The notes under the pieces are model-generated. The model saw only the letters and a program-made list of their open reading frames with translations. It was not told the DNA's origin and searched no databases. 64,000 bases of DNA from Haplodiscus bocki. Its lineage: Eukaryota. Below, piece by piece: positions 12,030 to 46,040 of the stretch; positions within the stretch are counted from its first letter, which is position 1; every line of letters begins with the position of its first letter. The stretch spans positions 21,328,001 to 21,392,000 of the forward strand of contig OZ296652.1 of NCBI GenBank assembly GCA_965655095.1, given 5' to 3'. The translations under genes were made by a program, and so were the position numbers.

Positions 12030-12660
12030 ACAATTTGACTTCAAATTGCACAAAAACAAATTTCAGCTTTTAGGGGGAGTTAATTGTTCGATAATGTCCA
12101 TTTGTTGTCAGGGAAAAGTGCAAACTCATATCTCAACATTTAATTGAGAAGACTAAAGAAGTAGCGACACTTCGTTGAGAAATCGACTCTTTTAGCAATG
12201 CACAACGGCCTAACTGAGCATTTGTTTTGTATCTTACACTAAAATTCTTTGTTTCTCTATATATACAGTCCTCATATTTATCTTGTTAGTTGTAGTTTAG
12301 GGAAAGGTTTGCAGTGAACAGTGTTCAGGAAATTCATGGGAAGTAAACGTAGAGATCGTAGCAACATGACTGTAGCGATGTAAAAAACAATGGCGAGCTC
12401 ATTTTAGTGAGGGTTTATCATTGCTTCATATCCTATATGAAAAGATCATGAAAAACCACTGCTTCACATGAGCATAATTAGATCTGTCAAAAAACTGGCA
12501 TTGTTCACAGTACAAATCTTGTGAGAAAAAAAAACAAATTACGATCCTTTCATAATCTCAAGCGAAGATATACTGTCTGAGAAAGTGTTCGAGAACAAGT
12601 TCTCTTAAAGGGGCAACAACCGGTCTGAGAAATGAAATATAAACTTACAATCGTTTCCTG
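12030..12660 (-). repeat. Inverted ~630 bp module homologous to part of the 1.53 kb array monomer (copy 1)
   Basis: AATTCATGGGAAGTAAACGTAGAGATCGTAGCAAC (~12331-12365) is the reverse complement of the monomer core. Homology runs from TTGACTTCAAATTGCAC to CAATCGTTTCC. Confidence 0.9.
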
Positions 12661-14859
12661 AGGCAGCGACAATCTGTGTGAGAAATTTATTTTAGTGGAA
12701 CAATTGATGTTTCAAGCAGCGACAGCTGGACTGGCAGAAACAGACTATCGATACAACCATCCCATCAAGTTAAGAGAGTTTGTTTGAGAAAAAATTAGTT
12801 TTCAGATAGGAAAACAAAAAGCATACCAAATGAACTGCTGTAAATGTCATTAAAATCTATCACAAAGTGAACAAAATTGATTTGCAGTAGGCTGGTGAAA
12901 GCAAAACACTTTTCCAAAAATGGTGTTATTTTGCTTTTCCAGTCCTCCGCACACGTTTTATAAATGGAGGTTGCTCAATTTGTCCCCAGTTTTAAGCAAA
13001 GGGTTAGGATTTAGGGCAACAAAGTTTTATCGCCGGAAATCCCCTTTTGGTTTAAAACAGCAGGTTTTTCCTATCAATGCAGAACTTTTCTCCTTCTCCG
13101 TCTTTTACCCAAACTTCCCTGCAAGGACACTTTTCGGTTGATCTTTTCGCGTGGGACTCATCTTTCTGAGAAACGGCATCCAAACGCAATTTAAAACGTT
13201 TTTACGGACTGCAAAGACTCAAATCGTGACTTAGAGATGCGGAAGTTTGATCAAAGTTTGATTTTGGAAACATGCTTCAACTTCAAAATCATAAATTTTC
13301 TATACTTTTTAATTCCTAGTTAGATAAAAAGTTCTCGTGGAAAAAAAATCTGTTGCTAAGATTGAAAACACTTTGAATTTTACAATAGAATGAAAAGAAC
13401 AGATTTTTAGATTTTTACGTACTAGCTGAGAATTGTTACTTACGATACAGCTACCAGCTGAAAAATGAAGTCTTTTTGTGGAAAACTTAGTCTGAAAAAC
13501 GAAGTGTTATTGCTCTATCAAATTAACCCACCTTTTTCAAGAAAAATGTCTTAAGTATGACCAAAAAGGAGAAGAAGTTCCATATATGGCAGTTTCTCTG
13601 GTCAAAAACCGAATAAAATCTATTCCATACAAGTTTGCTGTGATTTGTTTAAATCGTACACGAGCAGCAATTTGCTACTCCCAAGAATCACTCCTATGAA
13701 ATCATTCTCAACAACAATAACGAAACCTTGCTCTTTTTTCTTCTATCAGCATACACAACCACTACAGAAAATCTGACTAATACCTGTCTATGACAACAGT
13801 TCGGTGCCAATTTTATGTCGGAACTTAATGGATCTTCAAATATGCAAGAAACCTTGGTGAATTACCACTCAACACGAGGTTCTTTTTATGATTCCACATG
13901 AAGTCAACTCAGTATATTTCATCGTAGATCATAGGAACATCCAACTTAACCGGGTTTGCTCATGTGTGATTGGGTGACCTAATACTCGAGTATGATTAAC
14001 TGCCGACCCTCTGACAGCAGTGTTTTGAGATAGGCTATAGATGTACTACTGGCGACTGACTCTTTAAAAAACATTGTCTTTCACTTCTCCGCTAAATTTT
14101 TGGACAAGAGTTGGGGCTCAAAATGCTATGAAAAACCAAAAGGCGGACAACGTTTTCTGAAGAAGTTTATGCTCTGAAAAAGGGTAAGGCGCCTCTTCTA
14201 GTCTGCGATAGATTCAAAGTGTAAAGGTAAACTTTTTCAAGGTAGACATATATTCTTCCGCCGAGACAGGTACAGAGAAGCACGTATCTCTTCTGCTAAA
14301 TTCAGGAAAAAGAACAATGGTGTAGGCTTTCAACGGATCACTCTAAACGCGTTGAATGATGAGACCCATTTCTGTTAATTTTGGGCAGCAAAAAAGTAGT
14401 TACACTGAGTTTTTTTTTGAATGACACAAAATTATTTTGAAAATCACCAAACTCACCAAAAATGCAATCAATTTTCAGTGAAACATCTGTTTAATGCTCA
14501 GTTTCATTGATAGGTGCCACCCGTTGCCACAAAGATTTTGGTGTTGACTTGAAGAATTGTCTTCTTTGGAGCGGAACTTTGTGTTTCCTGATTGTTTACC
14601 GCAAAAATTCTTTTCAAAAACTCGGTATTAGTTTGACTCCTTTGAACGACTGTTCAAAAACTACAGCGCTCTCCAGAATACTGGAACGTTGTCTTTCTCT
14701 GTACACACACTCCAGTTGTTTATGATGTTGAACACTGTGCAGAAGGAGTCGTCAAACTCATGCGTGAGCTTAACCCAATGCAGCTTTTCAATCAAACTTC
14801 CCAACCATTTTTCCCAAGGGGGCTGCAAAGAATACTAGGGTAACAGTTGCGTGAAGGAC

Positions 14860-15497
14860 ACATTTTGATTTCAACTTCAACGAAAGCCTGTTCCAGTTTT
14901 TAGCAACAGTTAATTCTTCGATAATGTCTTTGAGTTGTCAAGGAATAGTGCAAACTCAAATATTGACAGTTTTTTGACAAGACGAAAGCAGTAGAGAGAG
15001 TTTGCCCTGTGAATTCCTTGACAAGTTGGGTCTTTTACCGCCGTACAAGAGGATTTGTCTTGTTTCTGATCCTACTCTCACTGGTTTTTTTTAAATACAA
15101 TAGAATCCTCTCAATTTACTTGTTCGTTCTACTTAAAGGAAAGTTTTCGAGTGGACAGTGTTTCTGGAATTCGTGGGAAGTAAACGTAGAGATCGTAGCA
15201 AATTGACTCTAGCAATGTAAAAAAAACAATGGCGAGCTCATTGTAGCAAGGTTTACTCATAGCTTCATATCGTATATGAAAAACCATAAAAAACCCTATT
15301 TCACATGAGCACAAACAGATCTGTCAAAGAAGACTGCATTGTTCGCAGAACATATCTGGTTGTGAAAAAAAAAACAAATTACTATCCTATTATCATCTCA
15401 AGCGAGGACATACTATCTGAGAAAAAAATCAAGAACAAGTTCCCATAAAGTGGCAAAAAAGTCTGAGAAAACAAATATAAAGTAACAATCGTTTCCT
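14860..15497 (-). repeat. Inverted ~630 bp module homologous to the array monomer (copy 2)
   Basis: TGGGAAGTAAACGTAGAGATCGTAGCAA (~15174-15201); same end points as copy 1. Confidence 0.9.
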
Positions 15498-16789
15498 GAA
15501 GCGGCAACAATGTGTGTGAGAAAACTACTTCAGTGGAACAGTTAGTCTTTCAGGCAGCGACAGGATTACTGTTGGAAACAGACAGGCAAAGAAACGGTCC
15601 TCCCAAGTGTTTAGAGTTTGTCTGAGAAAACATTGAGAGCAAAAAGCACACACAATGGAGTGCTGTTAAAACCTATAAAAGCTACCAAAAGATGAACAAA
15701 AGTGGGTAGCAAAAAGCTGGTGAAGGCAAAACAATTTTAGAAATTTTGTGGTCCTTTGCTTTTCCATTCCTCGGCACACATTCTCCAAAGGCAGGTTGCT
15801 GAACTAGTTTGAAGTTTTTGGCAAGGGTTTAAGTTTTGGCTCGGAGAAATTGTTTCACTGAAATTGGTTTTTTACGACAATACTTTGAGAATGTCTTCTA
15901 TATGGAAAGTTTTCATTCTGTCATTTACATAATTTTCCATCCAGGAACAACTCTCCATTGATTCTTCCGCGGTCGACTCATCTTTATTCAGAAAAAGGCA
16001 TCCAAACGCATTGCTAAACAATTTTATGGACTGAAATTACTCAAATCATGACTTAGAGATGCGAAGTTTTTGTCAAACTTTTCAAAACATGATTGAACTT
16101 CAAATTCTGAGAGGTTCCAATTTTTTTTTCATTCATAAGTAGATTCACTGTTCTTTTCCAACAACCTCATGGAAAAATAATTTCTGTTGCTAATACTCAA
16201 AAGACTTTGAGTTACACAATAGATATAAAGGGACACTTTTTGGGTTTTTACGTACTAGCTGAGAATTTTTAAAAACAATACATCTACCATCTGATTAATT
16301 ATGCGGTTTTGTAAATAACTGAGTCTGAAAAACAGAATATTTTAAGTTTTTGACTAAAGCACCAAAAGGGACCGTTTTTCCTCAAAAACTGTCATCATCA
16401 TGACGGAAAATGGAACAAAATCCAAATATGGCAGTTTCTTGGGTCAAAAACCAAACAAAAAAGATTTCTTCTCCAGACAAGTTTGCTGTGATTAACTCCT
16501 AATAATCACTCTTTAGAAGTCAATCTTAACAACAAGAACAACAATTATGCGGGTTTTTCCAGCTACCAGCATACCCAATCACTAGTTGGAATCCTCACTA
16601 AAACTTGTCTACGACCACAATTTGGGGCTCAAATATTGTCGAAATTGAAAATATTTCCATTACGCATGAAGCTATCTTGAATAACAAGTCAACGCAAGGT
16701 TCTTTTTATGATCCCAGAATGCCTTCAATTTATTTTTTTTTGCACCCGAAAGTCAACCTCATCTCAAATTGTGCTCAAAATTCAAGACG

Positions 16790-17340
16790 ACAATTTCTGT
16801 CGAAGACAAGGTGTACTTCATTGTTGAGGAAAACATCGTGACTGATGTAGAAATCTATCCCTGTTTTACATTTTAACCTGAAGCTGTCATCCGGGAACAA
16901 AAAAAGCTGGGCAGAATTTGTAAAAACCCGAATTGCATCCCAAATCATGATCAACGTAGCTATTTTTTTGATGAGGAGTCAAACTCTAACATCTTCGAGG
17001 ACTACTACAAATTTTCAATTTTGGAACGTGGATCCAGTATCTCTTTTATTATTCAACCACATTCATGATTTGGATCTGATGATCATTCAGTGTTCTCAAA
17101 CAGTAACTCATCAGAATAAAATAGACTTGCTTCCGCCGATCGACTCATTGCGACCAATGAACAATGAAAGGAAAGGGTTGAGAGGCAGCTTTGAATTCTT
17201 CCATAAAAAATCCCTACCGAACAGACAATTGAACAATACACTTCCTTTGGATGGAGAATTGCGTGACTCTTGGGAGCCTGGAGCGTTGGAAGATGTTCCT
17301 CCGTTTGTGACGAACTGTAACTGTATTGAAGTGTAGCTAT
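16790..17340 (+). pseudogene. Decayed coding fragment of unknown family, probably mobile-element derived
   Basis: A frame not in the ORF track reads EENIVTDVEIYPCFTF*PEAVIREQKKLGRICKNPNCIPNHDQRSYFFDEESNSNIFEDYY with scattered stops. It abruptly interrupts the second 2.83 kb unit. Confidence 0.35.
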
Positions 17341-18003
17341 TTCTTTTAGTTGTCTCGTTTTTTTTTGTTTGCTGGTGCAAAAAATACAATTTTTAATAAT
17401 TTTTTTTGTTCCTTTAACCTGATGATATTGTAGAAGAAGTTAATCTTCAACAACGAGTACCGAGTAAAGTACCAGACCTGTAACCACCCCAAATCGCAGT
17501 CCTTCTTAATATATTGCAGAACATCACCCTACCGTAAAGCATAGATGGACAATCTCCTTAGCTTCCACTCTCTATAACCTGCTTCATCACCTAAAAAAGT
17601 CAAGTCTATGCCTTATCGTGGTACCTGACGCCTAGGATGAGTCATTAAAACGAGAATATTTAATCTCTGTAGAATCTATCAAGATAGCCAGTGTTCTTGT
17701 CTTAGTAAAACCCTGCCAAACGCCTTTCACTATCTAAACAATTTGATGAACAAATTTGGATCGGGTAGCCTGTCTTAACATGTCCCACTAAGTTGATCAC
17801 CGCCGGGAGACTGGTAAACTATCCCAACTCAATAACTCAACCAACCAACTCCACAAATTACATTGAAACGTAGCCGAAATTTACCCTACCTTACTAAATG
17901 GATGATAACTTGGCAAATTGCAAAGAACTAGACACAAAACCGACACACTAGAGAAAAGCTGATTGAAAATCTGTCGCGTGCCAAAAAAGAGCGTTCTGAG
18001 GCA

Positions 18004-18165
18004 GACACATTGTAAAATTTTTAATTTGAAATCCGATATGTTTGAATTTTTTCAATTCAAAATCTGACACGTTGTAAAATTTTCAATTCAAAATATGACG
18101 CATTGTAAAAACATTGATTCAAAATCTGAAGCTTTGTCCAACGTTTTCATCAAAATCTGATTTTT
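18004..18165 (+). repeat. 31-bp minisatellite, ~5 copies
   Basis: GACACATTGTAAAATTTTTAATTTGAAATCC / GATATGTTTGAATTTTTTCAATTCAAAATCT / GACACGTTGTAAAATTTTCAATTCAAAATAT / GACGCATTGTAAAAACATTGATTCAAAATCT / GAAGCTTTGTCCAACGTTTTCATCAAAATCT. Confidence 0.9.
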
Positions 18166-18261
18166 TAGCTCGTTTCTCAGGTTCTTACTGAACAATCACA
18201 TCTACTGTCATGGTGAGAACTATTTTCCTGCGCAGCGGAGAAAAGAAAAACAATGTCTGTC

Positions 18262-21200
18262 AAAGTCACCAAAATACTCGCTGCACGATTTTCCTCCTGT
18301 ATGTTGATCATTTAGGCAACTTTCAACCAAAATTGATACTCGTGAATCAATTTGAAAAACCTTTTACATCCTGATTGGTCATCTAAATGTCCGAATATGG
18401 TAAGAGTCTGTAATTCCAGTCCATAATTGTACAGAGAATTAATAGGTTGTTAGACTGCAATTCGCACAAATGATTTATGTTTGGAAAAAATTCAAGTGGA
18501 CAACAATGTTGAAAACTATGGCTGCTGTTTTGTCACCAGTAATTTTTTTAACCAGGTTGTCCACAACACTCGTTGTTCACTTCCACAGATGACAAGGAAA
18601 AACATCTACATTTACCGAAAAATTGCCTTGCATACCATACCTCGAAATACTGTTTCCTATCTGATTGCCGTTACCATGCACTACTTATTGGCATAAACGA
18701 TTGTTCCGCTTGATTTTATTTTCCCTCAACTTGGCACCCTTTCAGGAGATTCTGTTCGCTTTCAGTTTGTCTTTGCTTGAGAGGATAAAATTTTCGCACT
18801 TTGTTTTTTTCTCATAACCAGATGTGTGCTGTGAACGATGCATTTTTTCGAGAGTCCACTTATTCTCATGCGAAGAAGTCCTTTCGCTTAAGATCTTTCC
18901 ATATGAAGTATACGGTAACTAGTAACCCTTGCTACATTGTTTTGGCCCTTATTTGTTTTTTATTGCAACAGTCAAGTTGCTACGGTCTCTACGTTTACTT
19001 CCCATGACTTTCTCAAACCCTCTTCACTGAAACGTTTTTCCGGAATTAGAACAAACAATGTACTTCGGGAGACTATGCTATACAAAGGAAAATTAGAGTA
19101 AAAAACAGGACAATTGGGTCTTTTGGGCATTTGTGCAACGTTTAAACACTCAACTTCTCAACGAACTCCCAAAACGAATTCTCTCTACTTCTTCAGTTAT
19201 CTCAAACTACTGCTGAATTATGAGTGTGCGTTTTTCTTTGGCAACAATGGACATTATCGAACATTTAACTCCCGTCAGAAACTGGAACTTGTTTTCGTGC
19301 AAATTGGAGTCAAGTTTTGTCTGTCAAGCTCCATTTACCCTGACAACGTTTAAAACCAGTATTTTGACTCTGGACTCCACTACCTGGATTGGTGGGAGAA
19401 CAAATTCTGTTTTCTTAAAGTTCTTTTGGACACGTCCGTTTTTCAACCACATAGATTGTGTTTTACTAGGTTTGATCCGCATCAGTTTAATGAATGCCAT
19501 TCATTCTGAAAATCATTTTTTTTATTTTGAAGCAGACTGTTAATTTCAGAGACAAAGTCCGATGGCTTAGGTATTTTGTTCGTAGACATGTTTAGGTAAA
19601 GGTATAATATTCGTCGGCTGAGTTTTTCCGAATACCAGAAAAAAGAAAGACGAGTGTAGGTTCTCCGGAACTTGTCTATTGGCAATTTTCCCGGTTTTCG
19701 TTCAAACACGGAAGACATTTTCTTCCGGTCGAGGTTCAATTTTGTCGAACCAGTGCCATCGAAAAGTTTGCTGCACAGCTTTGTTGCTGTCTGTTGATAA
19801 TTTTTGAAAAAAAATATGCGTATTTGGTACTCGTGAATCATCTTGCAAAATCTTTTCCAACGTGATCGGTCATTAAAAGTTCCTTTTACGGAAAAAGTCC
19901 ACAGTTTCGGCCATCTTTGTACAGCGAAGTAATGAGCTATTTCGCTTTATATCACCCAATCCATTTTTGTTTGAAAACCATTCCAGTGGACAGCGCTGTT
20001 GAAAAAACCATTGCTGCTGATATATTACAAGCAAAATTTTTTTTAAAATCCCAGTTACTCACAAAGCTCGTTGTTCACTTCCACATATTACGATGGAAGA
20101 CATCTACATATTCAGCAGAATTGCCTTGCAAATCATACTTTGAATTACTGTTCATTATCTGATTGCCGTCAATATGCAGTACTTCTTAGAGAAAACGATT
20201 GTTCCCATCGATGATGTTCCTAAGACAGTTTGGCTTCACTTGATTTGATAAAGGGTGCGCAATTCGTTTTTTCTCCCATAACCAGATGTGTGCTGTGAAC
20301 ATTACAGTTTTTTCTCACGGATCACTTTTTCTCATGTGAAGCAGTCGTTTTTTATGTTCTTTCCTTTTTTTGTATAAAGTCGGGAGTAGATCTTGCTACA
20401 CATTTTTCGCCGTGATTTGTTTTTTTTGCTACAAGTCAAGTTGCTACGATCTCTACGTCTACTTCCCATGAATTTCTTAAACCTTGTTCGCTGGAAGTTT
20501 TTCCCTCATTTAGAACGAAGGGGTAAATTGAGAGATCTATGCTACAGTAAAGACAAAGACAAGTAGAAAGCACAATAATATACAGGACCAATGCTCAGTT
20601 GGGCCTTTGTCCAGCACCTAAAGTCTCAACTTTTGATTGAACTCCCAAGATTAACTCCCTCTACGTCTTTAGTTTTCTCACATTACTGTTGAATTATCGG
20701 TTTTCTTTTTTCTTTGACTACAAAGAATAATATTTGAACAATTAACTCCTCCTATAAGCTGAAAAATGTTCGGTGCAAGTCACCTTTTGTCCTCGTAAAG
20801 TTTGAAGCCTGTTTTGTGACTCTGGGCTCACCTGCTGGGTTGGTAAACACACTTAGTTTACTATTTTGAAAATCTTTGTTCATGTCTACTTTTTTAACTA
20901 TGTAGGTTGTGTATAATTATGTTTGTTATGAGAATGCCATTCGTTCTGAGAATCGAGTTTTTCTATTCCGCACGAGATTGTTAATTTCAGACATGAGTTC
21001 CGAAGGCATGGGTTTTTTTCCTTGTAGTCTTTATGGGTAAAAGTATATTATTAGTTGGCTGAGTTTTTCCGAACAAGAGAAAAACGGCAGACGATTATAC
21101 GTTTTCCGGAAATAATGCATTGGTAAATATCTCAGTCTTCGTCCACACAAGTAATTTTTTCCCGGTCAAAAATAGACTTCGTCAAACCAGAGTCACCGAT

Positions 21201-24200: not shown

Positions 24201-27200
24201 TCCTGCTGTTTGTTGATCATCGTTGTAAAATTTATCCGTATTCGGTACTCGTGAGTCAATTTGCAAAATTTCTCACACCCTGTTGGGTCATCAAAAGTTT
24301 CATTTGCAGCAAAAGTTTATAAATTCAGCCCAACTTTGTAGAGCGAGGCAAGAGACTGTTTGGCTGTATTTCGCCCAAGACATTTTTTTTGAGAACCATT
24401 CGAGTAAGCAACGCTGCTAAAAAATCATGGCTGCTCCTATGTTGCGAGCAAAGTCATTTTTTATCAAAGCTAATCAAAGAACATGTCATTCATTTCAAGA
24501 TATCTCAATGGAAAACATCTACAAATTGAGAACAAAGGCCCTGTAAACCATGCCTCGAATTACTGTTTCTTATCTGTTTGCCAATACCATGCACTACATT
24601 TTGGGATAAACGATTGATCCGCTTGATTTTTTTGTCGGTCAACTTGTCGCCCTTTTGAAGCGCTTGTTCCCATCGATGATGTTTCGACAGTTTGTCTTCG
24701 CTTGAAAAGATAAAAGGTGCGCAATTTTTTTTTCTCATAACCAGATATGTGCTGTGAACATTGCAGTTTTTTCTCACAGATCACTTATTCTCATATGAAG
24801 CAGTCGTTTCTGTTATGGTCTTTCCTTTTATTGTATGAAGTAAGGAGCAAACCTTGCTACAAATTTCTCGACTTCCTTTTTTTTACACTGCCACAGTCAA
24901 GTTGCTTCGAACTCTACGTTTACTGCCCATGGATTTTATGAGCACTTTTTACAGGAACCGTCTCCCTTAAAACGAACGTACAAGTTAATTGTGAGGACCA
25001 TGCTATACAAAAGACAAAGGAAAGTAGAGTAATAAACAAGAGAATTGCTCAGTTGGCCCTTTGTATGGCGCCCAAAGACTCAACATCTCAACGAACTCCG
25101 AAGATGAACTCTCTCGACTTCTTTAGTCATCTCATTTTACTGCTGAATTATTAGTGTGCCCTTTTCCTTTGACCAGAGTTGGACATTATCAAAGAATTAA
25201 CTCGTCTTGAAAGCTGGAACTTGTTTTCGTGCAAATTGAAATCAAGATGTGTCTGTCAGGCTCAGGCACTTTTAGCCTCGGTACACTTTAAAACCTGTAT
25301 TGTGACCATAGACTCGACTAACTGGAACGATGAAAACACATTTTTTTTTATTTTAAAATTCTTTTGTGCATGTCTTTTAACCATATAGATTGTATATTGC
25401 CAGGTTTATTCCGGATCAGTTGAAAGAGTGCCATTTCTTCTCAGAGTCAGTTTTTTGATTTGGAAATTAACTGCTTTGTCATTGACAATGACCGATGGCT
25501 TCACGTTTTTCGTTCGAAGTCGTATTTGGGTGAAAGCATAATATTCGTTGCATCATTGTTTCTGAAGATCAGAATAATGAAACACGAGTAAAAGTTTTCC
25601 GGAAATTGTGCATTGGTAAAAATGTCGGTTTTCGACCGAACACGGAAGAGATTTTCTTCTGGTCAAAGCTCGTTCTTTTTTCAAACTAGAGTTATCTATA
25701 TAGTCGCTGCACAATTTTCCTGTTGTATGTTGATCATATTTGGAAAATTTATCCGTATTTGGTAGTCGTGAGTCATTTTGCAAAATCTTGCACACCCTGA
25801 TGAGTCATTGAAAGTTCCATTTACGACAAAAAATTCTATCTTCAGTCCAAATTTTTACAGCAAGGTAATAGATTGTTTGCCTGTAATTACACCATATCAT
25901 TTTGGTGGAGAACCATTGCAGCAGACAACGCTGTTGAAAAAACCAGGGCTGCTGCTTTGTTACAAGGAAATTCCTTTTCTATCCAAATTGCTCACAGAGC
26001 TCCTTGTTCACGTCCACAAAAACAAAAGAAAATGCAACTATATTTTGAGAAAAATTGCCCTGCAAACCATACTTCGAATTATTGTTCTTTGTTTTTTCAG
26101 GGTTACCATGTACCACTTCTTGGATAAAATGATTTTTCCACTTGATTTTTTTCTCAGACATTGTCGTCCTATCAGGAGAATTTGTTCCCCTTGATGAATT
26201 TTCTGCGACGGTATGTCTTTGTTTGAGATCATAAGGATTCGCTTTTTGTTTTTTCTTCTCATAACCCGATGTTTACTGTGATTAGTGAGGTTTTTTCTGA
26301 GAGTCCTCTTATCCTCATGTGAAGCAGTCTTTTGTTTAAGGTCCTTCCATATACGGTAAAAACAAAGTAGTAACCCTTGCTAAAAATTTTTCGCCCTTTT
26401 TGTATGAGAACCACAGTCAAGTTGCTACGATCCCTACATTTACTTCCCATGAATTTCCTAGACTTTGTTCAGTGAAACGTTTTTCCTTAATTAGATGGAA
26501 CATGTTAATTCGGAGGACTATGCTATACAAATTAAAAAGAAGAGTTGAGTAATACACAGGACAAATGCTCTGTTAGGCCTCTGTACAGCGCTAAAAACTC
26601 AACCTCTCAACGAACTCACAAGTTGAACTCCCTCTACTTCTTTAGTCATCTCAACTTACCGCTGAAAGATTAGTGTGCATTTTTTTGACAACAAATGGAC
26701 AATATTGAACAATTAACTCCTCTTAAAAACTGGAAACTGCTTTCGTGCAAATTGAAGTCATCTTCCCTCAGCAACCTTTTGCCCTGGTAAACATGAAAAC
26801 CTGCAATTTGACTCTGGACTCCACTAGTTGGATTAGTAAAAACAAATAAAACACTATTGTAAAAGTTTTCCGTGCATGTCTAATCTTTTAGCCATAAAGG
26901 TTGTGTATTCTTGGGTTTATCAAGGCATCAGATGAAAGAAAGCCATTCATTCTGAAAATCGATTTTTTTTTATTTTGAAGTAGATTGTTAATTTCAGAGT
27001 CAATGTCCGTTGGCTTCCGTTTTTTGTTCGTAGTCGTACTTGGGTAAAAGCATAATATTCCTCGGCTAAGCGTTTCCGAATACCAGAATAACGGAAGATG
27101 ACTATAAGTTTTCCGGAAGTTGTGCATTGTTAAAAATGTCGGTCATAGTCCAAAAACAGAAGAGGTTTTCTTTTGGTCATAGTTCGTTTTTGTTGGACCA

Positions 27201-30200
27201 GAGTCACCTATATAGCCGCTGCACATTTTCCATGCTGTATGTTGATCTTTTGCGAAATTCTGTCCCTCCTTGGTACTCGTGGATCAACTTGCAAAATCTT
27301 TCAAATCCTAATTGGCCATCAAACGTTTCTTTTACGATAAAAGTGTATAAATTCAGACCTAACTTGTGCAGCGGGTTAATAGACTGGTTGGCTGTAATTT
27401 GCCGAGGTCATTTTGGTTTTTCAAAATTCGAGCAGACAACGCTGTTTAGAAAATCATGGTTTCTGCTGTGTTGCAAGCAAAGTCCGTTTTTTTATCCAGG
27501 TTCATTAGAGAACTTGTTGTTCACTTCCGCATATCACAAAGAAAAACACTTATATAGTGGAAAAATTGCTTTGCGAGCGCTACTTCGAATCACAGTTCCT
27601 TATCTGATTGCCGAAACCAAGCACTACTTCATGGGGAAAACGATTGTTCCACTTGATTTCATTTTCAAGTCAAGTTGTCGCCCTCTGAGGAAATTTTGTT
27701 CCCTATTGAATATTTTCTCAGTCAGTATGTCTTCGATTGAGTTGACAAAATGTTGGCAATTTGTTTTTTTTCTCATAACAAGATGTGTGCTGGGAACGAT
27801 GCATTGTTTTCTGAGAAGCCACTTCTTCTCATGTGAAGGAGTCCTTTCTTTATAGTTCTCTCCGTATATGTTATAAAGTGAGGAGTAACTCTTGCTGAAA
27901 AACTTTTGCTTTTTTTTATGTTAAAAGGCCACAGTCATTTTGCTACGACCTCTACGTTTAATTTCCATTAACTTTCTTAACGTTAGTCATTTTTCATCCT
28001 CCCGTAATTAGAAGTTTTTTTTCACATCAGATGACGATATTATACAAAAGACAAAAAATCGTGGAGTATTATAAAAGACAAATGGTCAGTTTCCAGTTGT
28101 ACAGCGTTAGAAGACTCAGTTCTCAACGAACTCTCAAAATGAACTCCCTCTTCTTATTCAATCATCTCAAATTACTGCTGATTTTTGAGCGTGCACCCTT
28201 CTTTGACAACAAAGTGACTTTATCAAAGAAGTAACTCCTCCTAAAAGGTGGAATTTGTTTTCGTGCAAGTTGAAGTCAAGTTGTGTGCCTCAGGCACTTT
28301 TTTGCCCGAAAAACTTTAAAGCCCGTAGTGTGACTCTGGACTCCAGTAGCTGGATCGGTAAAACGGAAAATCTCCTTTTTTAAAATCCTTTCGTGAATGT
28401 TTAATATTTTAATCAAGTAGATTGTGTATTGCTACGTTTGATCCGCATAATTATAAAGAATGCCATTTGCTCTGAAAATCAGTCTTTTCATTGTGACAGC
28501 GACTGTTTTTTCCAGAGACAAAGTTTGATGGCTGAAATTTTTCGTTCGTAGTCGTGCTTGTGTTAAAGCATATTATTCACAGGGTCAGTGATTCCAAATA
28601 CCAGAAGACGACTATAAGTTTTCCGGAATTTTTCCATGGGTAAAAATTTTGGTTTTGGACGAAACAGTGAAGAGAATGTTTTCTGTTCAAGGGGTCGTTT
28701 TTGTCGAACCAGGGTCACTTATATAGTCGTTGCACGCTTTTCCCGCTGTATGTTGATCATCTTTTAATTTTATCCGTATTCGGTTTTCGTGAGTCAATTT
28801 GCAAGATTACTTACATCCTGTTTGGTTATCAAAAGATCCATCTCCAGCAAAAAATTGTAACTTCAGCCCAATTTCGTACAGCGAGTTAAGATACTGTTTG
28901 GTTGTACTTCGCCCAAGACATTTTTTTGAGAACCGTTCGAGTAAGCAACGCTGTTAAAAAAACCATGGCTGCTCCTATGTTGCGAGAAAAGTCCTTTTTT
29001 ATCCAGGTTATTCAGAGTACTTGTCGTTCACTTCAAGATATCTCAATGGAAAACATCTACAAATTGAGAACGAAGGCCCCTTAAACCATGCCTCGAATTA
29101 CTATTTCTTTTCTGCTTGCTGTTACCATGCACTACTTTTTGGAATAAACGATTGTTCCGCTTGATTTTATTTTCCCTCAACTTGGCACCCTTTCAGGAGA
29201 TTCTGTTCGCTTTCAGTTTGTCTTTGCTTGAGAGGATAAAATTTTCGCACTTTGTTTTTTTCTCATAACCAGATGTGTGCTGTGAACGATGCATTTTTTC
29301 GAGAGTCCACTTATTCTCATGCGAAGAAGTCCTTTCGCTTAAGATCTTTCCATATGAAGTATACGGTAACTAGTAACCCTTGCTACATTGTTTTGGCCCT
29401 TATTTGTTTTTTATTGCAACAGTCAAGTTGCTACGGTCTCTACGTTTACTTCCCATGACTTTCTCAAACCCTCTTCACTGAAACGTTTTTCCGGAATTAG
29501 AACAAACAATGTACTTCGGGAGACTATGCTATACAAAGGAAAATTAGAGTAAAAAACAGGACAATTGGGTCTTTTGGGCATTTGTGCAACGTTTAAACAC
29601 TCAACTTCTCAACGAACTCCCAAAACGAATTCTCTCTACTTCTTCAGTTATCTCAAACTACTGCTGAATTAAGAGTGTGCGTTTTTCTTTGGCAACAAAT
29701 GGACACTATCGAACATTTAACTCCCCTCAGAAACTGGAACTTATTTTCGTGCAAATTGGAGTCAAGTTTTGTCTGTCAAGCTCCATTTACCCTGACAACG
29801 TTTAAAACCAGTATTTTGACTCTGGACTCCACTACCTGGATTGGTGGGAGAACAAATTCTGTTTTCTTAAAGTTCTTTTGGACACGTCCGTTTTTCAACC
29901 ACATAGATTGTGTTTTACTAGGTTTGATCCGCATCAGTTTAATGAATGCCATTCATTCTGAAAATCATTTTTTTTATTTTGAAGCAGACTGTTAATTTCA
30001 GAGACAAAGTCCGATGGCTTAGGTATTTTGTTCGTAGACATGTTTAGGTAAAGGTATAATATTCGTCGGCTGAGTTTTTCCGAATACCAGAAAAAAGAAA
30101 GACGAGTGTAGGTTCTCCGGAACTTGTCTATTGGCAATTTTCCCGGTTTTCGTTCAAACACGGAAGACATTTTCTTCCGGTCGAGGTTCAATTTTGTCGA

Positions 30201-32050
30201 ACCAGTGCCATCGAAAAGTTTGCTGCACAGTTTTGTTGCTGTCTGTTGATAATTTTTGAAAAAAAATATGCGTATTTGGTACTCGTGAATCATCTTGCAA
30301 AATCTTTTCCAACGTGATCGGTCATTAAAAGTAATGAGCTATTTCGCTTTATATCACCCGATCCATTTTTGTTTGAAAACCATTCCAGTGGACAGCGCTG
30401 TTGAAAAAACCATTGCTGCTGATATGTTACAAGCAAAATTTTTTTAAAATCCCAGTTACTCACAAAGCTCGTTGTTCACTTCCACATATTACGATGGAAG
30501 ACATCTACATATTCAGCAGAATTGTCTTGCAAATCATACTTTGAATTACTGTTCATTATCTGATTGCCGTCACTTTGCAGTACTTCTTAGGGAAAACGAT
30601 TGTTCCGCTTGATTTCGTTTCTGAGACTGCTTTTTGCCCTTTTAGGAGAATTTGTTGCTCTGGATGATTTCTCCCAGACAGTAAGTCTTTGCTTGAGATG
30701 ATTAAACTTTCGCACTTTGTTTTGTTCCCCAAATCAGATTGTTATTATGAACAATGCAGTTTTTTCGACAGTAGTTTTTTTCTGGCGTGAAGCAGTTGTT
30801 TCTTTTAAAGGTTTTCCATATACTGTATAAAATAAAGAGTAACGCTGGTTTGGAAACTTTTGCTTTCAGTTATTTAGCAATGCCACACTCAAGTTGCTAC
30901 GATCTCTACGTTTACTTCCCATCACTTTCCTATACACTGTTCATTGGAACATTTTCTCGTATTTAGAACGAACCAGTTAATTCGGTGGACTATGCTATAA
31001 AAAGACAAAGAAGAGTAGAATAATATCAAGGACAAATGCACTGTTGGGCATTTGTACAGCACTAAAAGGCTCAACTTCTCAAAGAACTCACCGGGTGAGC
31101 TGTCTCTACTTCTTTAGCTATCTCAAATCACTGCTGAATTAAAAGTGTACACGTTTCTTTGACGGCAGATGGACATTATCGAACAATTAACTCCTCTTAG
31201 AAACCGGAACTTGTTATCGTGCAAATTGAAGTCCAGTTGTGTCTGTCAAATACCTTTTGCCCTGAAAAAGTTTTACAAACCAGTATTGTGACTCTGGACT
31301 CCACTACCTGGATTGGTGTAAAAACAAATTCTGTTTTCTCTAGAATTCTAGAATTCCTTTGTGCGTGTCTAATTTTCAAGCAGATAGATTGTGTTTTGGT
31401 AGGATTGATCCCCATCACTTAAAACAATGCTATCCATTCAGGAAGTCAGTTTTTTTGTTTCTAAAAAGAGTTTGTCATTTTCAAAGGCAATGTATGAGGG
31501 CTTAGGTATTTTAGTCGTAGTCATTTTTGGCTAAAAGTATAGTGATAATTGGCTCAAAGTTTCCAAATACCAAAATAACCGGAGACCACAGTAGGTTTTC
31601 TGGAATTTGTGTATTGGTAAAAATCTCGCTTCTCGTCCTGCTGTATATTGAGCATTTTTCGAGTTTTTATCCGTGTTTGGGACTCGTGAATCAATTTGCA
31701 AAACCTTTTACATCCAGACTGGTATGAAAAGCTCCTTTTGCGGTAAAATTCTATAACTGTAGCCCGTATTTGTACAGCGAGTTAAGAGATTGTTCGGCCG
31801 TAATTCGCGAAAGTCATTTTTGTTCGAGAACCATTCGAGTAGACAACGCTGTTGGGAAAACCATGGCTGCGGCTATGTTACGAGCAAAAACTTTTCTAAT
31901 TGCAGGATTTCTACAAAGCTTGTTGTTCATTTCTCCGTATCACAACGAGAAACATCTACAAATTCAGAAGAATTGGATTGCAAATCATACTTGGAATTAA
32001 TGTTCCGAATCTGATTGCCGTCACTATGCACAACTTCTTGGGGAAAATGA
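18262..32050 (+). repeat. Diverged edge layer of the array (~9 monomers)
   Basis: Neighbouring monomers differ by many substitutions and deletions; the period varies from ~1400 to ~1540 bp. Confidence 0.9.
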
Positions 32051-35000
32051 TTGCTCCACTTGATTTCACTTCTCAGACAGCTTGTCGCCTTTCTAGGAGA
32101 ACTTGTTCCCCTGGATGATTTTTCTCAGACAGCATGTCTTCTCTTGAGATTTTAAAAGTTTCGCAAGTTGCTTTTTTTCAAAACCAGGTGTGTATTGTGA
32201 ACAATGCAGTTTCTACTGACAGTCCTCTTATTCTTGTGTGAAGCAGACTTTTCTTTTAAGGTACTTCCATTTACGGCAGAAAGAAATTAGTAACCCGTGC
32301 TACAAATTTTTTGCCCTTGTTTGTTTTTGATTTTCACAGTCAAGTTGCTAAGATCTCTATGTTTGCTTCCCATGAATTTACTGAACACCGTTCACTGTAA
32401 CGCTTTCCCTTACTTAGAACGAACAAGTCAATCCAGCGGACTTAGCTATCCAAAAGACAAGGAAAAGTAAAGTAATATACATAAAATGTGCCCAGTTGGG
32501 CCTTTCTACAGCACTAAAAGACTCAACCTCTCTACGAACCCCCAAGATCAACTCTCTCTGTTTTCCTAGTCATCTCAAATTACTGCTGAAATATGAGTGT
32601 GCACTTTTCTTTGACAACAAAGATACCTTTTCCAACAGTTGACTCCTCCTAAAAACGGAACTTGTTTTCGTGCCAGTTGAAGTCAAGGTTGAGACTCATA
32701 AACTTTTTGCCCAGGTAAATGTTACAGCCTCTATTGTGAGTTCAGACACCATTAGGTGGATCGGTAACAACGCATGACATAATTTTTCAAAATAATCTGT
32801 GCTTGTCTAATATTTTAACCATATAGGTTGTTCATTGCTAAGTTTGTTCCGCATCAGTTAAGATAATGCTTTTTTTCTGAAAATCACTTTTTTGTCTTTG
32901 AAGGAGACTTTTAAATTCACAGGCAAGGTCTGATTGCTTAGGTTTTTTGTTCGTAGTCATCAATTGGAAAAAGTTGTAATTCGTTGGCGGAGTGTTTCCG
33001 AATACCAGATTAACGAAAGACGACTATATAAACGTCTTCCGGTAATTGTTTTTTTTTCTAAAACTGTTGGTTTTCGTCCATACATGGAACATATTTTCTT
33101 CTGGTCATGGTTCGATTTTGTCGAACCAGTGTCACCGATATAATTGCTGCACCATTTTCTTGTTGTATGTTGACAAATTTTGTAAAATGCATCCGTATTT
33201 GGTGCTCGTGAATCACCTTGCAATTTTTTTTGCAACTTGATTGGTCATCAAAAGTTCTATTTACGGAAGAAATCTACAATTTCAGGCCATAGTTGTACAG
33301 CGAAGTAATGGCCTGTTTGGCTTTATTTCACATAATTCAGTTTTGTTTTGAAACCATTCCAGTAGACAACACTGTTAAAAAAACCATTGCTGCTGATATG
33401 TTATAAGCAAAATCATTTTTTAAATCCAAATTAGTCACAAAAATCGTTGTTCACTTCCACATATCATAATAAAAAACATCTACATTTTTATCAGAAATGC
33501 CTTGCAAATCTTACTTAGGATTATTGTTCTTTTTGTGATTGCCGTCACTATGCACTACTTCTTGGGGAAAAGTATTGCTCCGCTGGATTGCATTTCTCAG
33601 ACAGCTTGTCGCACTTTTAGGAGACCTTGTTCCCCTGGATGATTTTTCTCAGACAGCATGTCTTCTTTTGAGATTTTAAAAGTTTCGCAAGTTGCTTTTT
33701 TTCAAAACCAGGTGTGTATTGTGAACAATGCAGTTTCTACTGACAGTCCTCTTATTCTTGTGTGAAGCAGACTTTTCTTTTAAGGTACTTCCATTTACGG
33801 CAGAAAGAAATTAGTAACCCGTGCTACAAATTTTTTGCCCTTGTTTGTTTTTGATTATCACAGTCAAGTTGCTAAGATCTCTATGTTTACTTCCCATGAA
33901 TTTACTGAACACCGTTCACTGTAACGCTTTCCCTTACTTAGAACGAACAAGTCAATCCAGAGGACTTAGCTATCCAAAAGACAAGGAAGAGTAAAGTAAT
34001 ATACATAAAATATGCCCAGTTGGGCCTTTCTACAGCACTAAAAGACTCAACCTCTCTACGAACCCCCAAGATCAACTCTCTCTGTTTTCCTAGTCATCTC
34101 AAATTACTGCTGAAATATGAGTGTGCACTTTTCTTTGACAACAAAGAGACCTTTTCCAACAGTTGACTCCTCCTAAAAACGGAACTTGTTTTCGTGCCAG
34201 TTGAAGTCAAGGTTGAGACTCATAAACTTTTTGCCCAGGTAAATGTTACAGCCTCTATTGTGAGTTCAGACACCATTAGGTGGATCGGTAACAACGCATG
34301 ACATAATTTTTCAAAATAATCTGTGCTTGTCTAATATTTTAACCATATAGGTTGTTCATTGCTAAGTTTGTTCCGCATCAGTTAAGATAATGCTTTTTTT
34401 CTGAAAATCACTTTTTTGTCTTTGAAGGAGACTTTTAAATTCACAGGCAAGGTCTGATTGCTTAGGTTTTTTGTTCGTAGTCATCAATTGGAAAAAGTTG
34501 TAATTCGTTGGCGGAGTGTTTCCGAATACCAGATTAACGAAAGACGACTATATAAACGTCTTCCGGTAATTGTTTTTTTTTGTAAAACTGTTGGTTTTCG
34601 TCCATACATGGAACATATTTTCTTCTGGTCATGGTTCGATTTTGTCGAACCAGTGTCACCGATATAATTGCTGCACCATTTTCTTGTTGTATGTTGACAA
34701 ATTTTGTAAAATGCATCCGTATTTGGTGCTCGTGAATCACCTTGCAATTTTTTTTGCAACTTGATTGGTCATCAAAAGTTCTATTTACGGAAGAAATCTA
34801 CAATTTCAGGCCATAGTTGTACAGCGAAGTAATGGCCTGTTTGGCTTTATTTCACATAATTCAGTTTTGTTTTGAAACCATTCCAGTAGACAACACTGTT
34901 AAAAAAACCATTGCTGCTGATATGTTATAAGCAAAATCATTTTTTTAATCCAAATTAGTCACAAAAATCGTTGTTCACTTCCACATATCATAATAAAAAA

Positions 35001-44000: not shown

Positions 44001-46040
44001 GTAATGGCCTGTTTGGCTTTATTTCACATAATTCAGTTTTGTTTTGAAACCATTCCAGTAGACAACACTGTTAAAAAAGCCATTGCTGCCGATATGTTAC
44101 AATCAAAATCAGTTTTTTAAATCCAAGTTAGTCACAAATTTCGTTGTTCACTTCAACATATCACAATAAAAAACATCTACATATTTAGCAGAAATGCCTT
44201 GCAAATCTTACTTGGAAGTATTGTTCCTTATCTGATTGCCGTCACTATGCACTACTTCTTGGGGAAAAGGATTGCTCCACTTGATTTCGTTTCTCAGACA
44301 GCTTTCGACATTTTAAGAGAACATGTTCCCCTGGATTAATTTCTCAGACAGCAAGTCTTCCCTCAAAATTTTAGAAGTTTCGCAACTTGCTTTTTTCTCA
44401 AAACCAATTGTAAATTGTGAACAATGCAGTTTCTTCTGACAGTCCTTTTATTCTTGTGTGAAGCAGTCTTTTCTTTTAAGATCCTTCCATATACGGCAGG
44501 AAGAAATTAGTAACCCTTGCTACAAATTTTTCGCCCCTATTTGTTTTTGATTACCACAGTCAAGTTGCTAAGATCTCTACGTTTACTTCCCATGAATTTA
44601 CTGAACACTGTTCACTGTAACGCTTTCCTTTGCTTAGAACGCACAAGTCAATCCAGAGGACTATGGTATCCAAAAAACAAGGAAGAGTAAAGTAATATAC
44701 ATGAAATATGCCCAGTTGGGCCTTTCTACAGCACTAAAAGACTCAACCTCTCTACGGACTCCCAACATCAACTCTCTCTGATCCTTTAGTCATCTCAAAT
44801 TACTGCTGAAACATGAGTGTGCACTTTTCTTTGTCAACAAAGAGACCTTATCCTACAGTTGACTCCTCCTAAAAACGGAACCTGTTTTCGTGCCAGTTGA
44901 AGTCAAGGTTGTGACTCAGGCACTTTTTACCCTGGCAAATGTTACAGCCTGTATTGTGAGTCTAGACACCATTAGTTGCATCGGTAACAACACAGGGCCT
45001 AATATTTCAAAATATTCTGTGCATGTCTAATATTTTAACCATATAAGTTGTTCATTGCTATGTTCGTTCCGCATCAGTTAAGATAATGCTCTTTATTCGT
45101 AAATTATTTTTTTGTTTTTTGAAGGAGATTTTTAACTTCAGAGACAATGTCTAATTGCTTAGATTTTTTGTTCGTAGTCATCAATTGGAAAAAGTACGTA
45201 ATTCGTTGGCTGAGTGTTTCCGAATACCAGATTAACGAAAGACGACTATATAAACGTCTTCCGGAAATTGTTCTTTTTTGGTGAAACTGTTGGTTTTCGT
45301 CCGGACATGGAACAGATTTTCTTCTGGCCAAGGTTCGATTTTGTCGATCCAGTGTCACCGATATATTTGCTGCACTGTTTTCTTGCTGTATGTTGATAAC
45401 TTTTGTAAAGTAAATCCTTATTTGGTGCTCGTGAATCAACTTGGAATTTTTTTTTGCAACTTGATTGGTCATCAAAAGTTCTATTTGAGGAAAAATTCTA
45501 CAATTTCAGGCCAAAATTGTACCGTGAAGTAATGGCCTGTTTGGCTTTAATTCACCGAATTCATTTTTGTTTTGAAACCATTCCAGTAGACAACACTGTT
45601 TAAAAAACCATTGCTGCTGATATGTTATAAGCAAAATCATTTTTTTAAATCCAAATTAGTCACAAAAATCGTTGTTCACTTCAACATATCATAATAAAGA
45701 ACATCTACATATTTAGCAGAAATGCCTTGCAAATCTTACGTGGAAATATTGTTCCTTATCAGATTGCCGTCACTATGCACTACTTCTTGGGGAAAAGGAT
45801 TGCTCCACTTGATTTCGTTTCTCAGACAGTTTTCGACATTTTAAGAGAACTTGTTCCCCTGGACTAGTTTCTCAGACAGCAAGTCTTCCCTCAAAATTTT
45901 AGAAGTTTCGCAACTTGCCTTTTTCTCAAAACCAATTGTAAATTGTGAACAATGCAGTTTCTTCTGACAGACCTTTTATTCTTGTGTGAAGCAGTCTTTT
46001 ATTTTAAGATCCTTCCATATACGGCAGAAAGAAATTAGTA
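32050..46040 (+). repeat. Homogeneous domain 1, variant order A-A-A-B-B-C-A-A-B
   Basis: Near-identical chance ORFs act as markers: A type at 32934, 34458, 36008, 42089, 43622; B type at 37457, 38982, 45104; C type at 40557. Period 1524-1533 bp. Confidence 0.85.

What the first reader, a model, noticed from the sequence alone, without database searches (positions are those of the whole stretch)
12331..32385. Unusually conserved ~28-nt block shared by the monomers and both inverted 2.83-kb units
Seen: TTGCTACGATCTCTACGTTTACTTCCCA is exact in inverted form at ~12337-12364 and ~15174-15201 and exact at ~30894. It is within 1-4 mismatches at ~18977, 20440, 21922, 23439, 24902, 26422, 27940, 29428, and mostly reads TTGCTAAGATC... 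in the core, while flanks look far more diverged by eye. It ends in TTCCCATG, matching the CSL/Su(H)/LAG-1 consensus RTGGGAA on the minus strand (CGTGGGAA at 15172). Inference: a constrained protein-binding box, analogous in role to a CENP-B box, or a small-RNA/target site.
Basis: partly seen in the sequence, partly recalled or inferred. Interest (0 to 1): 0.7.

Follow-up and report, generated by a model that had tools for sequence, protein, structure and literature searches.

The report
Conserved box in transposon-derived satellite
A 28-letter stretch really is the best-kept part of a 1.5-kb tandem repeat, but both the repeat and the box come from a common gene-less, virus-like (Maverick-ended) mobile element, so it is a candidate protein docking site inherited from that element and not a centromere or Notch-pathway box.

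Summary
The block is at every stated place and in all 41 monomers; the array runs about 17 kb past the window. It is also in both inverted 2.83-kb units. Among 13 old units that differ by about 30%, it has about a third of the expected changes (22 against 62.5) and is the best of 1,499 windows. Significance depends on the null: P<0.0003 by column shuffling, 0.02 to 0.16 under stricter nulls. In the young core it is not an outlier.

The 1.5-kb monomer is an inner piece of one arm of a gene-less palindromic element with Maverick/Polinton-type ends ((AGT)2 tips, 6-bp target duplication). Earlier scan notes describe such palindromes elsewhere in this genome. The block closes a roughly 170-bp module found at 1,000 or more places in the genome, in two repeat families whose likeness stops just after the block. 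The array's own TTCCCA ending occurs only at this locus.

Best reading: an inherited cis-acting site, probably for a DNA-binding protein. The binder is unknown and untested. The CSL/Su(H) match fails, since the canonical site is in 1 of 43 units. There is no CENP-B box, RNA family, hairpin or coding signal. No RNA data exist, so the small-RNA idea stays open. A known kind of thing; moderate interest.

The parts
12337..12364 (-). Block, exact copy, in inverted 2.83-kb unit 1 (inv1)
15174..15201 (-). Block, exact copy, in inverted 2.83-kb unit 2 (inv2). This is the only unit where the flank makes a canonical CGTGGGAA (15172-15179).
11330..16493 (-). Two tandem 2.83-kb units, 68-72% identical, which form the minus-strand arm. 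Each holds monomer positions 397-1095 plus arm sequence that the monomer lacks.
9811..14208 (-). Left copy of a young inverted duplication. It is 97% identical to C5:21411120-21415551 beyond the far end of the array, so the exact block there is not independent of inv1.
16554..17924 (-). Innermost 1.4 kb of the palindromic element's arm (arm positions 1-1386). The old palindrome centre is at about 17924.
18277..31644 (+). Nine old, diverged monomers (m1-m9), about 70% identical to each other and to the core. The block has 0-4 mismatches in each.
31645..64000 (+). Homogenised core of the 1.5-kb array (82-100% identical), mostly with the TTGCTAAGATC form. It continues about 17 kb past the window's end, for 41 monomers in all, with two diverged monomers at the far edge.
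30894..30921 (+). Block, exact copy, in diverged monomer m9
49149..49176 (+). Block in the representative core monomer (48449-49974 in my rotation, block at positions 701-728)
49018..49176 (+). A roughly 170-bp module (monomer positions about 570-728) shared by dispersed families A and B. It holds a CArG-like box, three TTGCTAC-type repeats in the family consensus, and the block at its 3' end.
49071..49080 (.). Decayed copy (CCATATACGG) of the module's CCATATATGG palindrome, which is better kept than the block in dispersed copies
48853..48954 (+). Two roughly 51-bp subrepeats at the monomer junction (positions 405-506). The junction lies on a short sequence present at both ends of the amplified arm piece.

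Best explanation
Shown: the 1.5-kb satellite is an inner 1.5-kb piece (arm positions about 1994-3570) of one arm of a gene-less palindromic mobile element with Maverick/Polinton-type ends, copied head to tail 41 times. The two inverted 2.83-kb units are the opposite arm of the same old palindrome, whose centre is near 17924. The block is the 3' end of a roughly 170-bp non-coding module that occurs at 1,000 or more places in the genome, in two repeat families. Over the long time in which the locus's old units diverged by about 30%, the block took about one third of the substitutions of its surroundings. Its edges are sharp, and the locus-specific TTCCCA ending never changed. Inferred: the block is a cis-acting docking site for a sequence-specific DNA-binding protein. 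It was inherited from the mobile element's own set of signals and kept at this locus, possibly because units with an intact site are the ones retained or re-amplified. The binder could come from the host or from the element and is unknown. It is not a CSL site and not a centromere box.
For: The monomer is homologous to an abundant dispersed non-coding family. Copies of that family sit in the arms of 10-13-kb palindromes. One of these (E1, 13.25 kb) starts AGTAGT and has a 6-bp target duplication, TTTAGA, which fits the published Maverick end motif and TSD (PMC8097293). The window maps as centre, minus arm and plus array. The block is conserved in the dispersed copies too and is the top window there. 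Likeness between families A and B stops right after CTACGTTTAC. The degenerate block has 1,046 genome hits against 6 for the control. At the locus there are 35 changes against 90.9 expected, P<2e-4. The diverged units give 22 against 62.5, the best of 1,499 windows. Base context does not explain it. The flanks are not conserved: 2.98 and 2.54 changes per column on the two sides. That argues against long conversion tracts. No unit carries the dispersed TTCAGA ending, and the array's form is unique to the locus. That rules out copying from dispersed elements.
Against: There is no direct evidence for any binding protein. Under nulls that keep regional rate variation, significance drops to P about 0.02-0.16. 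In the young core the block is not an outlier, and CpG-loss variants (CTATG, CTACA) have spread there. In the dispersed families the block barely exceeds its neighbours (0.863 against 0.856), and the nearby CCATATATGG box has more near-exact genome hits. The copy in E1 is badly decayed (7 of 25 mismatches). Selection on single units of a 41-copy array is expected to be weak.
Confidence: 0.4

Rival explanations
1. No function at this locus. The block is simply the luckiest window in a repeat with uneven substitution rates, helped by having started from an already well-kept part of the parent element.
For: Per-column changes are autocorrelated. Block permutation gives P=0.024, and z=-2.75 against 53 windows is about 0.16 after correction. 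The block is not an outlier in the core.
Against: In the part present in all 13 old units the block has 22 changes and every other window has 45 or more (z=-3.3). It is also the longest exact run in the separate comparison of inv1 with inv2 (P about 0.012). Neutral decay after amplification should not remember the parent's conserved parts, and the array and family profiles correlate only weakly (rho -0.14).
Confidence: 0.3
2. The block is a recombination or rearrangement site. It promotes breakage and rejoining, by illegitimate recombination or transposase-like cutting, so it marks module junctions and is carried along whenever units are re-amplified. This was proposed for conserved boxes in nematode satellites.
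For: Likeness between families A and B ends exactly at the block's 3' end, and the module sits at two different positions in the arms. Rider-derived arrays with other unit lengths (3.6 and 4.4 kb) that hold the block occur elsewhere. Precedent: PMC3694981.
Against: In this array the monomer junction lies about 300 bp from the block, on a 51-bp subrepeat and not on the block. The 2.83-kb unit junction was not shown to lie at the block either.
Confidence: 0.15
3. The block is the source or the target of a small RNA of about 28 nt (piRNA-sized), and that pairing keeps the sequence.
For: The length fits. Both strands of the block begin with T (1U). The parent family is a high-copy mobile element, a natural piRNA target.
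Against: There is no hairpin (z 0.89 and -0.18) and no Rfam match. No RNA run holds the sequence, and the four runs found behave like DNA. Conservation extends unevenly over about 42 nt (positions 694-735) with variable positions at 707-710, which a single small RNA does not explain well.
Confidence: 0.1
4. The block is a CSL/Su(H)/LAG-1 binding site.
For: The minus strand reads ATGGGAA in most units and CGTGGGAA at 15172.
Against: The canonical YGTGRGAA occurs at the block in only 1 of 43 units. The window holds 8 such sites against 10.4 expected. Conservation covers 28-42 nt, not 8. The TGGGAA part is absent from the ancestral family.
Confidence: 0.03

Closest known systems
Conserved boxes in satellite DNA monomers (CENP-B box of alpha satellite; CENP-B-box-like and other motifs in Meloidogyne satellites, PMC3694981)
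   Same: A short motif is kept far better than the rest of the monomer across diverged units of a tandem repeat. It lies at a junction between sequence modules. There is a link to transposon biology.
   Different: There is no sequence likeness to the CENP-B box. This is a single 62-kb locus, not a chromosome-wide centromeric satellite. The monomer is 1.5 kb, not about 170 bp. No binder is known.
Transposon-derived satellites (tandem amplification of an inner part of a mobile element, for example Helentron/MITE-borne satellites of bivalves, PMC7492417, PMC3879986)
   Same: The monomer is a piece of a dispersed element and the copies are head to tail and in register. The edges are old and diverged and the core is homogenised.
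   Different: The parent here is a gene-less palindromic element with Maverick/Polinton-type ends, not a Helitron or MITE. The unit is a single 1.5-kb stretch and not the element's own short inner repeats.
Maverick/Polinton virus-like transposons (end motifs and 6-bp TSD as in PMC8097293)
   Same: The parent family's full copy E1 has AGTAGT tips, long inverted arms and a 6-bp target duplication. The genome is full of protein-primed polymerase genes.
   Different: No polymerase, integrase or capsid gene was found in the copies read. The arms are 3-6.5 kb and make up almost the whole element. I could not show that the block lies in the inverted repeats of a gene-bearing Maverick.
Adenovirus-type subterminal cis signals (packaging 'A repeats', auxiliary origin sites); recalled from memory, a lead only
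   Same: In family B the module, with its repeated TTGCTAC motif, lies about 0.5-0.75 kb from the tip, next to subterminal tandem repeats. That is where relatives with protein-primed replication keep cis signals.
   Different: There is no sequence likeness and no functional data. In family A and in the array the module is in the middle of the arm.

Membership tests
CENP-B-box-type centromeric satellite box | Short motif conserved above the monomer background | tested here: met
   35 changes against 90.9 expected, the best window; 6.9% against 20.8% mismatch in the old units
CENP-B-box-type centromeric satellite box | Resides in the centromeric satellite of many or all chromosomes | tested here: not met
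   All 39 genome hits to the array's form of the block are at this one C5 locus. The array is about 62 kb.
CENP-B-box-type centromeric satellite box | Matches the core of the CENP-B box (TTCG-N4-A-N2-CGGG; recalled from memory) | tested here: not met
   2 hits with one mismatch against 4.6 expected, none at the block
CENP-B-box-type centromeric satellite box | Bound by a specific protein | not testable with these tools
   Needs EMSA, pulldown or ChIP
CSL/Su(H)/LAG-1 site | Canonical YGTGRGAA present in the conserved units | tested here: not met
   Present at the block in only one unit (15172). The window has 8 sites against 10.4 expected.
Transposon-derived satellite | Monomer homologous to a dispersed element over its whole length | tested here: met
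   Dispersed copies cover monomer positions 405 to 1526 and on through 1 to 420, at 60-75% identity. The first look found more than 1,100 candidates.
Transposon-derived satellite | Head-to-tail copies in register, with a junction explained by short homology | tested here: met
   Period 1451-1534 in all 41 units. The junction lies on an ATTGC...TTGATT sequence present at both ends of the amplified piece.
Maverick/Polinton-ended non-autonomous palindromic element (parent family) | (AGT)2 or (AG)3 end motif with inverted ends | tested here: met
   E1 starts AGTAGT and ends with the inverse of AGTATT. E2 has AGTTGT and AGTAGT. The motif is as quoted in PMC8097293.
Maverick/Polinton-ended non-autonomous palindromic element (parent family) | 6-bp target site duplication | tested here: inconclusive
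   E1 has TTTAGA on both sides. The older E2 shows none. Only two full copies were read.
Maverick/Polinton-ended non-autonomous palindromic element (parent family) | No polymerase, integrase or capsid genes | tested here: met
   No Pfam or PHROG hit for any ORF of 80 aa or more in the two copies. tblastx shows no preferred reading frame.
Maverick/Polinton-ended non-autonomous palindromic element (parent family) | This window's locus ends in the same tips | tested here: inconclusive
   Outer-arm sequence (arm 6178-6297) lies beyond the far end of the array. The left tip was not found, and the locus is rearranged.
piRNA/small-RNA source or target | 26-31-nt reads piling up on the block | not testable with these tools
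   No RNA run holds the stretch. The four runs found are DNA-like short contigs.
Structured RNA gene (miRNA, snRNA, SL RNA, tRNA) | Match to a known family, or a stable fold | tested here: not met
   Rfam at gathering and at E<=1 gives 0 hits. ARAGORN finds 0. Fold z-scores are 0.89 and -0.18.

The most novel reading that the evidence does not exclude
The block, with the repeated TTGCTAC motif before it, is the recognition site of a Maverick-encoded or Maverick-derived DNA-binding protein. It would be a cis signal, for packaging, replication or integration, that lets gene-less palindromic riders be propagated by Mavericks. The array would keep it because that machinery still acts on it, for example by driving its re-amplification.
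Probability: 0.12. Interest if true: 0.7.

Novelty: new member of a known kind. Interest (0 to 1): 0.35.

Why it matters
Conserved boxes inside otherwise fast-changing satellites are among the few handles on what tandem repeats do. Here the box can be traced to a defined module of a very abundant, poorly understood class of elements: gene-less palindromic riders with Maverick/Polinton ends in an acoel genome. If a protein binds it, that would give a first cis-acting signal for such elements, and an example of a satellite inheriting a transposon's protein-binding site. If nothing binds it, the case shows how far uneven decay alone can mimic a functional box.

Tried and rejected
- **Structured RNA:** Rfam on the whole window (gathering) and on one monomer (E<=1) gave no hits. 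ARAGORN found no tRNA. Folding 231 nt around the block on both strands gave no stable structure. The miRNA, snRNA, SL-RNA and tRNA-derived readings are rejected.
- **Coding:** there is no conserved ORF. tblastx hits are equal in all frames, and ORFs in the window and the parent elements have no Pfam or PHROG hits. Of the changes in the block, about 6 of 18 are synonymous in the only open frame, which is no excess (my reading).
- **CSL site:** rejected.
- **CENP-B box:** rejected.
- **Repeated binding sites along the arms:** TTGCTAC is not enriched outside the module.
- **Copying from dispersed elements:** rejected, because no unit has the dispersed TTCAGA ending.
- **Base-context mutation bias:** rejected.
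- **Long gene-conversion tract:** unlikely, because the flanks are at or above the average rate.
- **Expression:** no RNA runs were found, and the laid contigs are short, DNA-like pieces.
- **Linking the 15-21-kb inverted pairs to polymerase genes:** none of the 98 listed pPolB places fell inside the pairs I could see. That is uninformative, since only 91 of 10,959 candidates were scored.
- **Fetching family B copies:** Family B rests on two loci (L017, L018) plus pattern counts.
- **A 27-nt inverted match (monomer positions 59-83 against 681-707, E=0.004):** not followed up.
Full report
**1. The observation**

The 28-mer has 31 matches with up to 3 mismatches in the window, against 0 in shuffles. 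Allowing up to 5 mismatches adds the copy at 21923.
- It is exact on the minus strand at 12337-12364 and 15174-15201, and exact at 30894.
- It has 1-4 mismatches in the other eight left-hand monomers.
- The core mostly reads TTGCTAAGATC.
- CGTGGGAA is at 15172-15179.

All the stated facts are right. The range given is too narrow. The plus-strand copies recur every 1451-1534 bases to the end of the window. After joining the neighbouring loci, they continue to about 80.8 kb in window coordinates. That makes 41 monomers, every one with the block at 5 mismatches or fewer.

**2. The array**

Monomers m1-m9 (18277-31644) are only about 70% identical to each other and to the rest. From 31645 on, the monomers are 82-100% identical, with segmental re-duplications. 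The two last monomers at the far edge are again diverged. This is the usual picture of an array with old edges and a homogenised core.

The two inverted 2.83-kb units (11330-16493) are 68-72% identical to each other. Each holds monomer positions 397-1095 in reverse orientation.

**3. Is the block more conserved than chance would give?**

I aligned all units and counted parsimony changes per column on a tree.
- **32 units:** the block has 26 changes against 68 expected. The next clean windows have 41 or more, and column permutation never reached 26 in 5,000 trials.
- **43 units, gaps counted as changes:** 35 against 90.9 expected, next best 54, P<2e-4.
- **13 old units:** the block differs from their consensus at 6.9% of positions, against 20.8% in the rest of the shared region.
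- **Base context:** trinucleotide context predicts 69 changes, so composition does not explain it.
- **Edges:** they are sharp. The 50 columns before the block average 2.98 changes and the 50 after its 50-column bin average 2.54, against 1.62 in the block's own bin.
- **Extent:** at single-base level the kept stretch runs from about 694 to 735, with variable positions at 699-700 and 707-710.
- **inv1 against inv2:** in this separate pairwise comparison (2,434 columns, 68% identical) the block is the longest exact run, P about 0.012.

Two cautions apply.
- Per-column changes are autocorrelated. Permuting 14-column blocks gives P=0.024. Against the spread of 53 other non-overlapping windows the block is at z=-2.75, about 0.16 after correction. 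In the part that all 13 old units share it is at z=-3.3, with 22 changes against 45 or more everywhere else.
- The signal comes from the old units, where the block has 22 changes against 62.5 expected and is the best of 1,499 windows. In the 30 young core units the block has 13 against 27 expected and is not an outlier. CpG-loss variants of it have spread there.

So the block is real, the best-kept window and about three-fold slowed. It is not invariant, and its significance ranges from moderate to strong depending on the null.

**4. What the repeat is**

- **Not RNA or protein:** the monomer has no Rfam match, no tRNA, no stable fold around the block and no coding signal.
- **A dispersed family:** it is homologous over its whole length to an abundant dispersed non-coding family, which I call family A. 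The first look found more than 1,100 candidates at 60-75% identity.
- **Palindromic parents:** these copies typically come as minus/plus pairs a few kb apart. The ones I read are the arms of large palindromes.
- **Two full copies:** E1 (C11, 13.25 kb) has 6.5-kb arms at 92% identity and a 285-bp loop. E2 is 10.4 kb.
- **Ends:** E1 starts AGTAGT, ends with the inverse of AGTATT, and is flanked by TTTAGA on both sides. This fits the (AGT)2//(ACT)2 end motif and 6-bp target duplication reported for Mavericks (PMC8097293). The older E2 shows no duplication.
- **No genes:** no ORF in either copy hits Pfam or PHROGs.
- **Mavericks are abundant:** the genome holds a very large number of protein-primed polymerase genes, 10,959 first-look candidates.
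- **Earlier notes:** notes of this scan describe the same kind of gene-less palindromes with Maverick-type ends in this genome, and call the organism an acoel worm. I tested the palindrome, the ends and one target duplication myself, but not the organism.

**5. The locus**

Mapped on E1's arm, with position 1 at the centre and 6481 at the tip, the window reads as follows:
- arm 1-1386 at 17924 down to 16554, on the minus strand;
- then the two 2.83-kb units on the minus strand;
- to the right of 17924, a 31-bp tandem repeat;
- then the plus-strand array, whose monomer equals arm positions about 1994-3570.

The locus is therefore one old palindromic element. An inner 1.5-kb piece of the right arm was amplified 41-fold, and a 2.83-kb piece of the left arm was duplicated.

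The monomer junction lies on a short sequence (ATTGC...TTGATT). That sequence starts the family's 51-bp subrepeats and is also found at the other end of the amplified piece.

Beyond the array, C5:21411120-21415551 is a 97% inverted copy of window 9811-14208. The exact block found there is therefore not independent of inv1.

**6. The block in the wider genome**

- **Dispersed family A copies:** the block is also well kept. In an alignment of 29 independent copies its window is the top one, but only just: 0.863 against 0.856, 0.855 and 0.851.
- **The module:** the block is the 3' end of a roughly 170-bp module (monomer positions about 570-728).
- **Family B:** a second, more abundant family (up to 2,488 first-look candidates) shares the module. 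There it sits between arm positions 5813 and about 6100, some 0.5-0.75 kb from the tip. Likeness between A and B stops just after CTACGTTTAC.
- **Repeats in the module:** the module's consensus holds three TTGCTAC-type repeats, the last inside the block. The heptamer is not enriched elsewhere in the arms.
- **Genome counts:** the family form of the block has 524 hits at 2 mismatches or fewer. With four variable positions left open it has 1,046 hits at 1 mismatch or fewer, against 6 for the control. Two subfamily forms dominate.
- **The CArG-like box:** a CCATATATGG-centred box 88-92 bp upstream has even more hits, 1,729 and 2,835. In the dispersed elements the block is therefore not the best-kept part.
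- **Locus-specific form:** the array's own form, ending TTCCCA, occurs only at this locus. All 39 hits are on C5 here.
- **Different profiles:** the conservation profiles of the array and of the family correlate only weakly, rho -0.14.

The extra conservation at the locus is therefore not simply inherited. It also cannot be due to copying from dispersed copies, because no unit carries their TTCAGA or TTCAAA ending.

**7. How it most likely works**

*Shown:* the transposon origin of the satellite, the module, and the slowed change of the block in the old units.

*Inferred:* a sharp 28-42-nt cold spot that includes locus-specific bases, sits in non-coding DNA and has no RNA structure is most simply a docking site for a sequence-specific DNA-binding protein, inherited from the element's cis signals. 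I put this at 0.4.

The rivals are:
- uneven neutral decay plus after-the-fact choice of the window (0.3);
- a recombination or rearrangement site, as proposed for conserved boxes at module junctions in nematode satellites (PMC3694981), favoured by the A/B breakpoint at the block but not by the array's own junction (0.15);
- a small-RNA source or target (0.1), untestable because the only four runs that hold the sequence are short, DNA-like contigs from one study;
- a CSL site (0.03), with the canonical YGTGRGAA in only one unit and no enrichment.

A centromere role is unlikely. The array is a single 62-kb locus and has no CENP-B-box likeness.

**8. Limits**

- I could not show whether the inverted pairs of block hits 15-21 kb apart flank Maverick genes.
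- There are no relatives of this genome in the collections, so no cross-species test was possible.
- The adenovirus-type analogy and the CENP-B core pattern are recalled from memory.

**9. Verdict**

This is a new member of a known kind, a conserved box in a transposon-derived satellite, made somewhat more interesting by its origin in Maverick-ended palindromic riders.

Noticed in passing
window 49071-49080 (decayed copy); genome-wide, e.g. C1:126885266 and C1:193399322: A perfect CC(A/T)6GG palindrome (CCATATATGG, the form of an SRF/MADS CArG box) sits 88-92 bp upstream of the block in the shared module. Its 18-mer has 2,835 genome hits at 1 mismatch or fewer, more than the block, yet it is decayed in the array.
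   Followed up: partly
window 9811-14208 and C5:21411120-21415551 (L021:1120-5551): A young inverted duplication, 97% identical and 4.4 kb long, brackets the whole array. The 62-kb array therefore lies in the spacer of a roughly 78-kb palindrome-like structure. A second partial copy is at L021:27-1122, matching window 10795-9699.
   Followed up: partly
window 18004-18129: A 31-bp tandem repeat (4.1 copies, 72% matches) lies right beside the old palindrome centre (about 17924), between the minus arm and the first monomer.
   Followed up: no
C3:72149289-72167034 and C2:68991132-68998367 (not fetched): Block hits on one strand at regular 4.4-kb and 3.6-kb spacing suggest other tandem arrays, with different unit lengths, grown from the same element family.
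   Followed up: no
G000 genome-wide; e.g. C4:88368991-88370433 (+) and C4:88381124-88382563 (-): There are 10,959 first-look candidates for the protein-primed DNA polymerase family PF03175, many with long open frames. At least one pair of polymerase genes lies in inverted orientation 12 kb apart, which may be a gene-bearing palindromic dimer.
   Followed up: no
L057:8904-9539 (+), mirrored at L057:896-1531 (-): A 211-aa ATG-started ORF is kept in both arms of palindrome E1, just outward of the part homologous to the monomer. It has no Pfam or PHROG hit.
   Followed up: partly
window 32345-43060 and 59847-59874; beyond the window at about 67492 and 72048: In the core, block variants that lose a CpG (CTATG, CTACA) recur in groups of monomers. 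CpG columns also change somewhat more often than average (3.1 against 2.4 per column). This is a hint of CpG-directed mutation in this genome.
   Followed up: no
window 46093-64000: Core monomers form near-identical sets at 2-, 4- and 6-monomer spacing (for example m21=m23, m25=m29 and m20~m26 at 98-100%). This shows recent segmental re-duplication within the array rather than one fixed higher-order period.
   Followed up: no
window 48507-48531 and 49129-49155 (monomer positions 59-83 and 681-707): There is a 27-nt inverted match (81%, E=0.004) between the sequence just before the block and a site 620 bp upstream in the same monomer.
   Followed up: no
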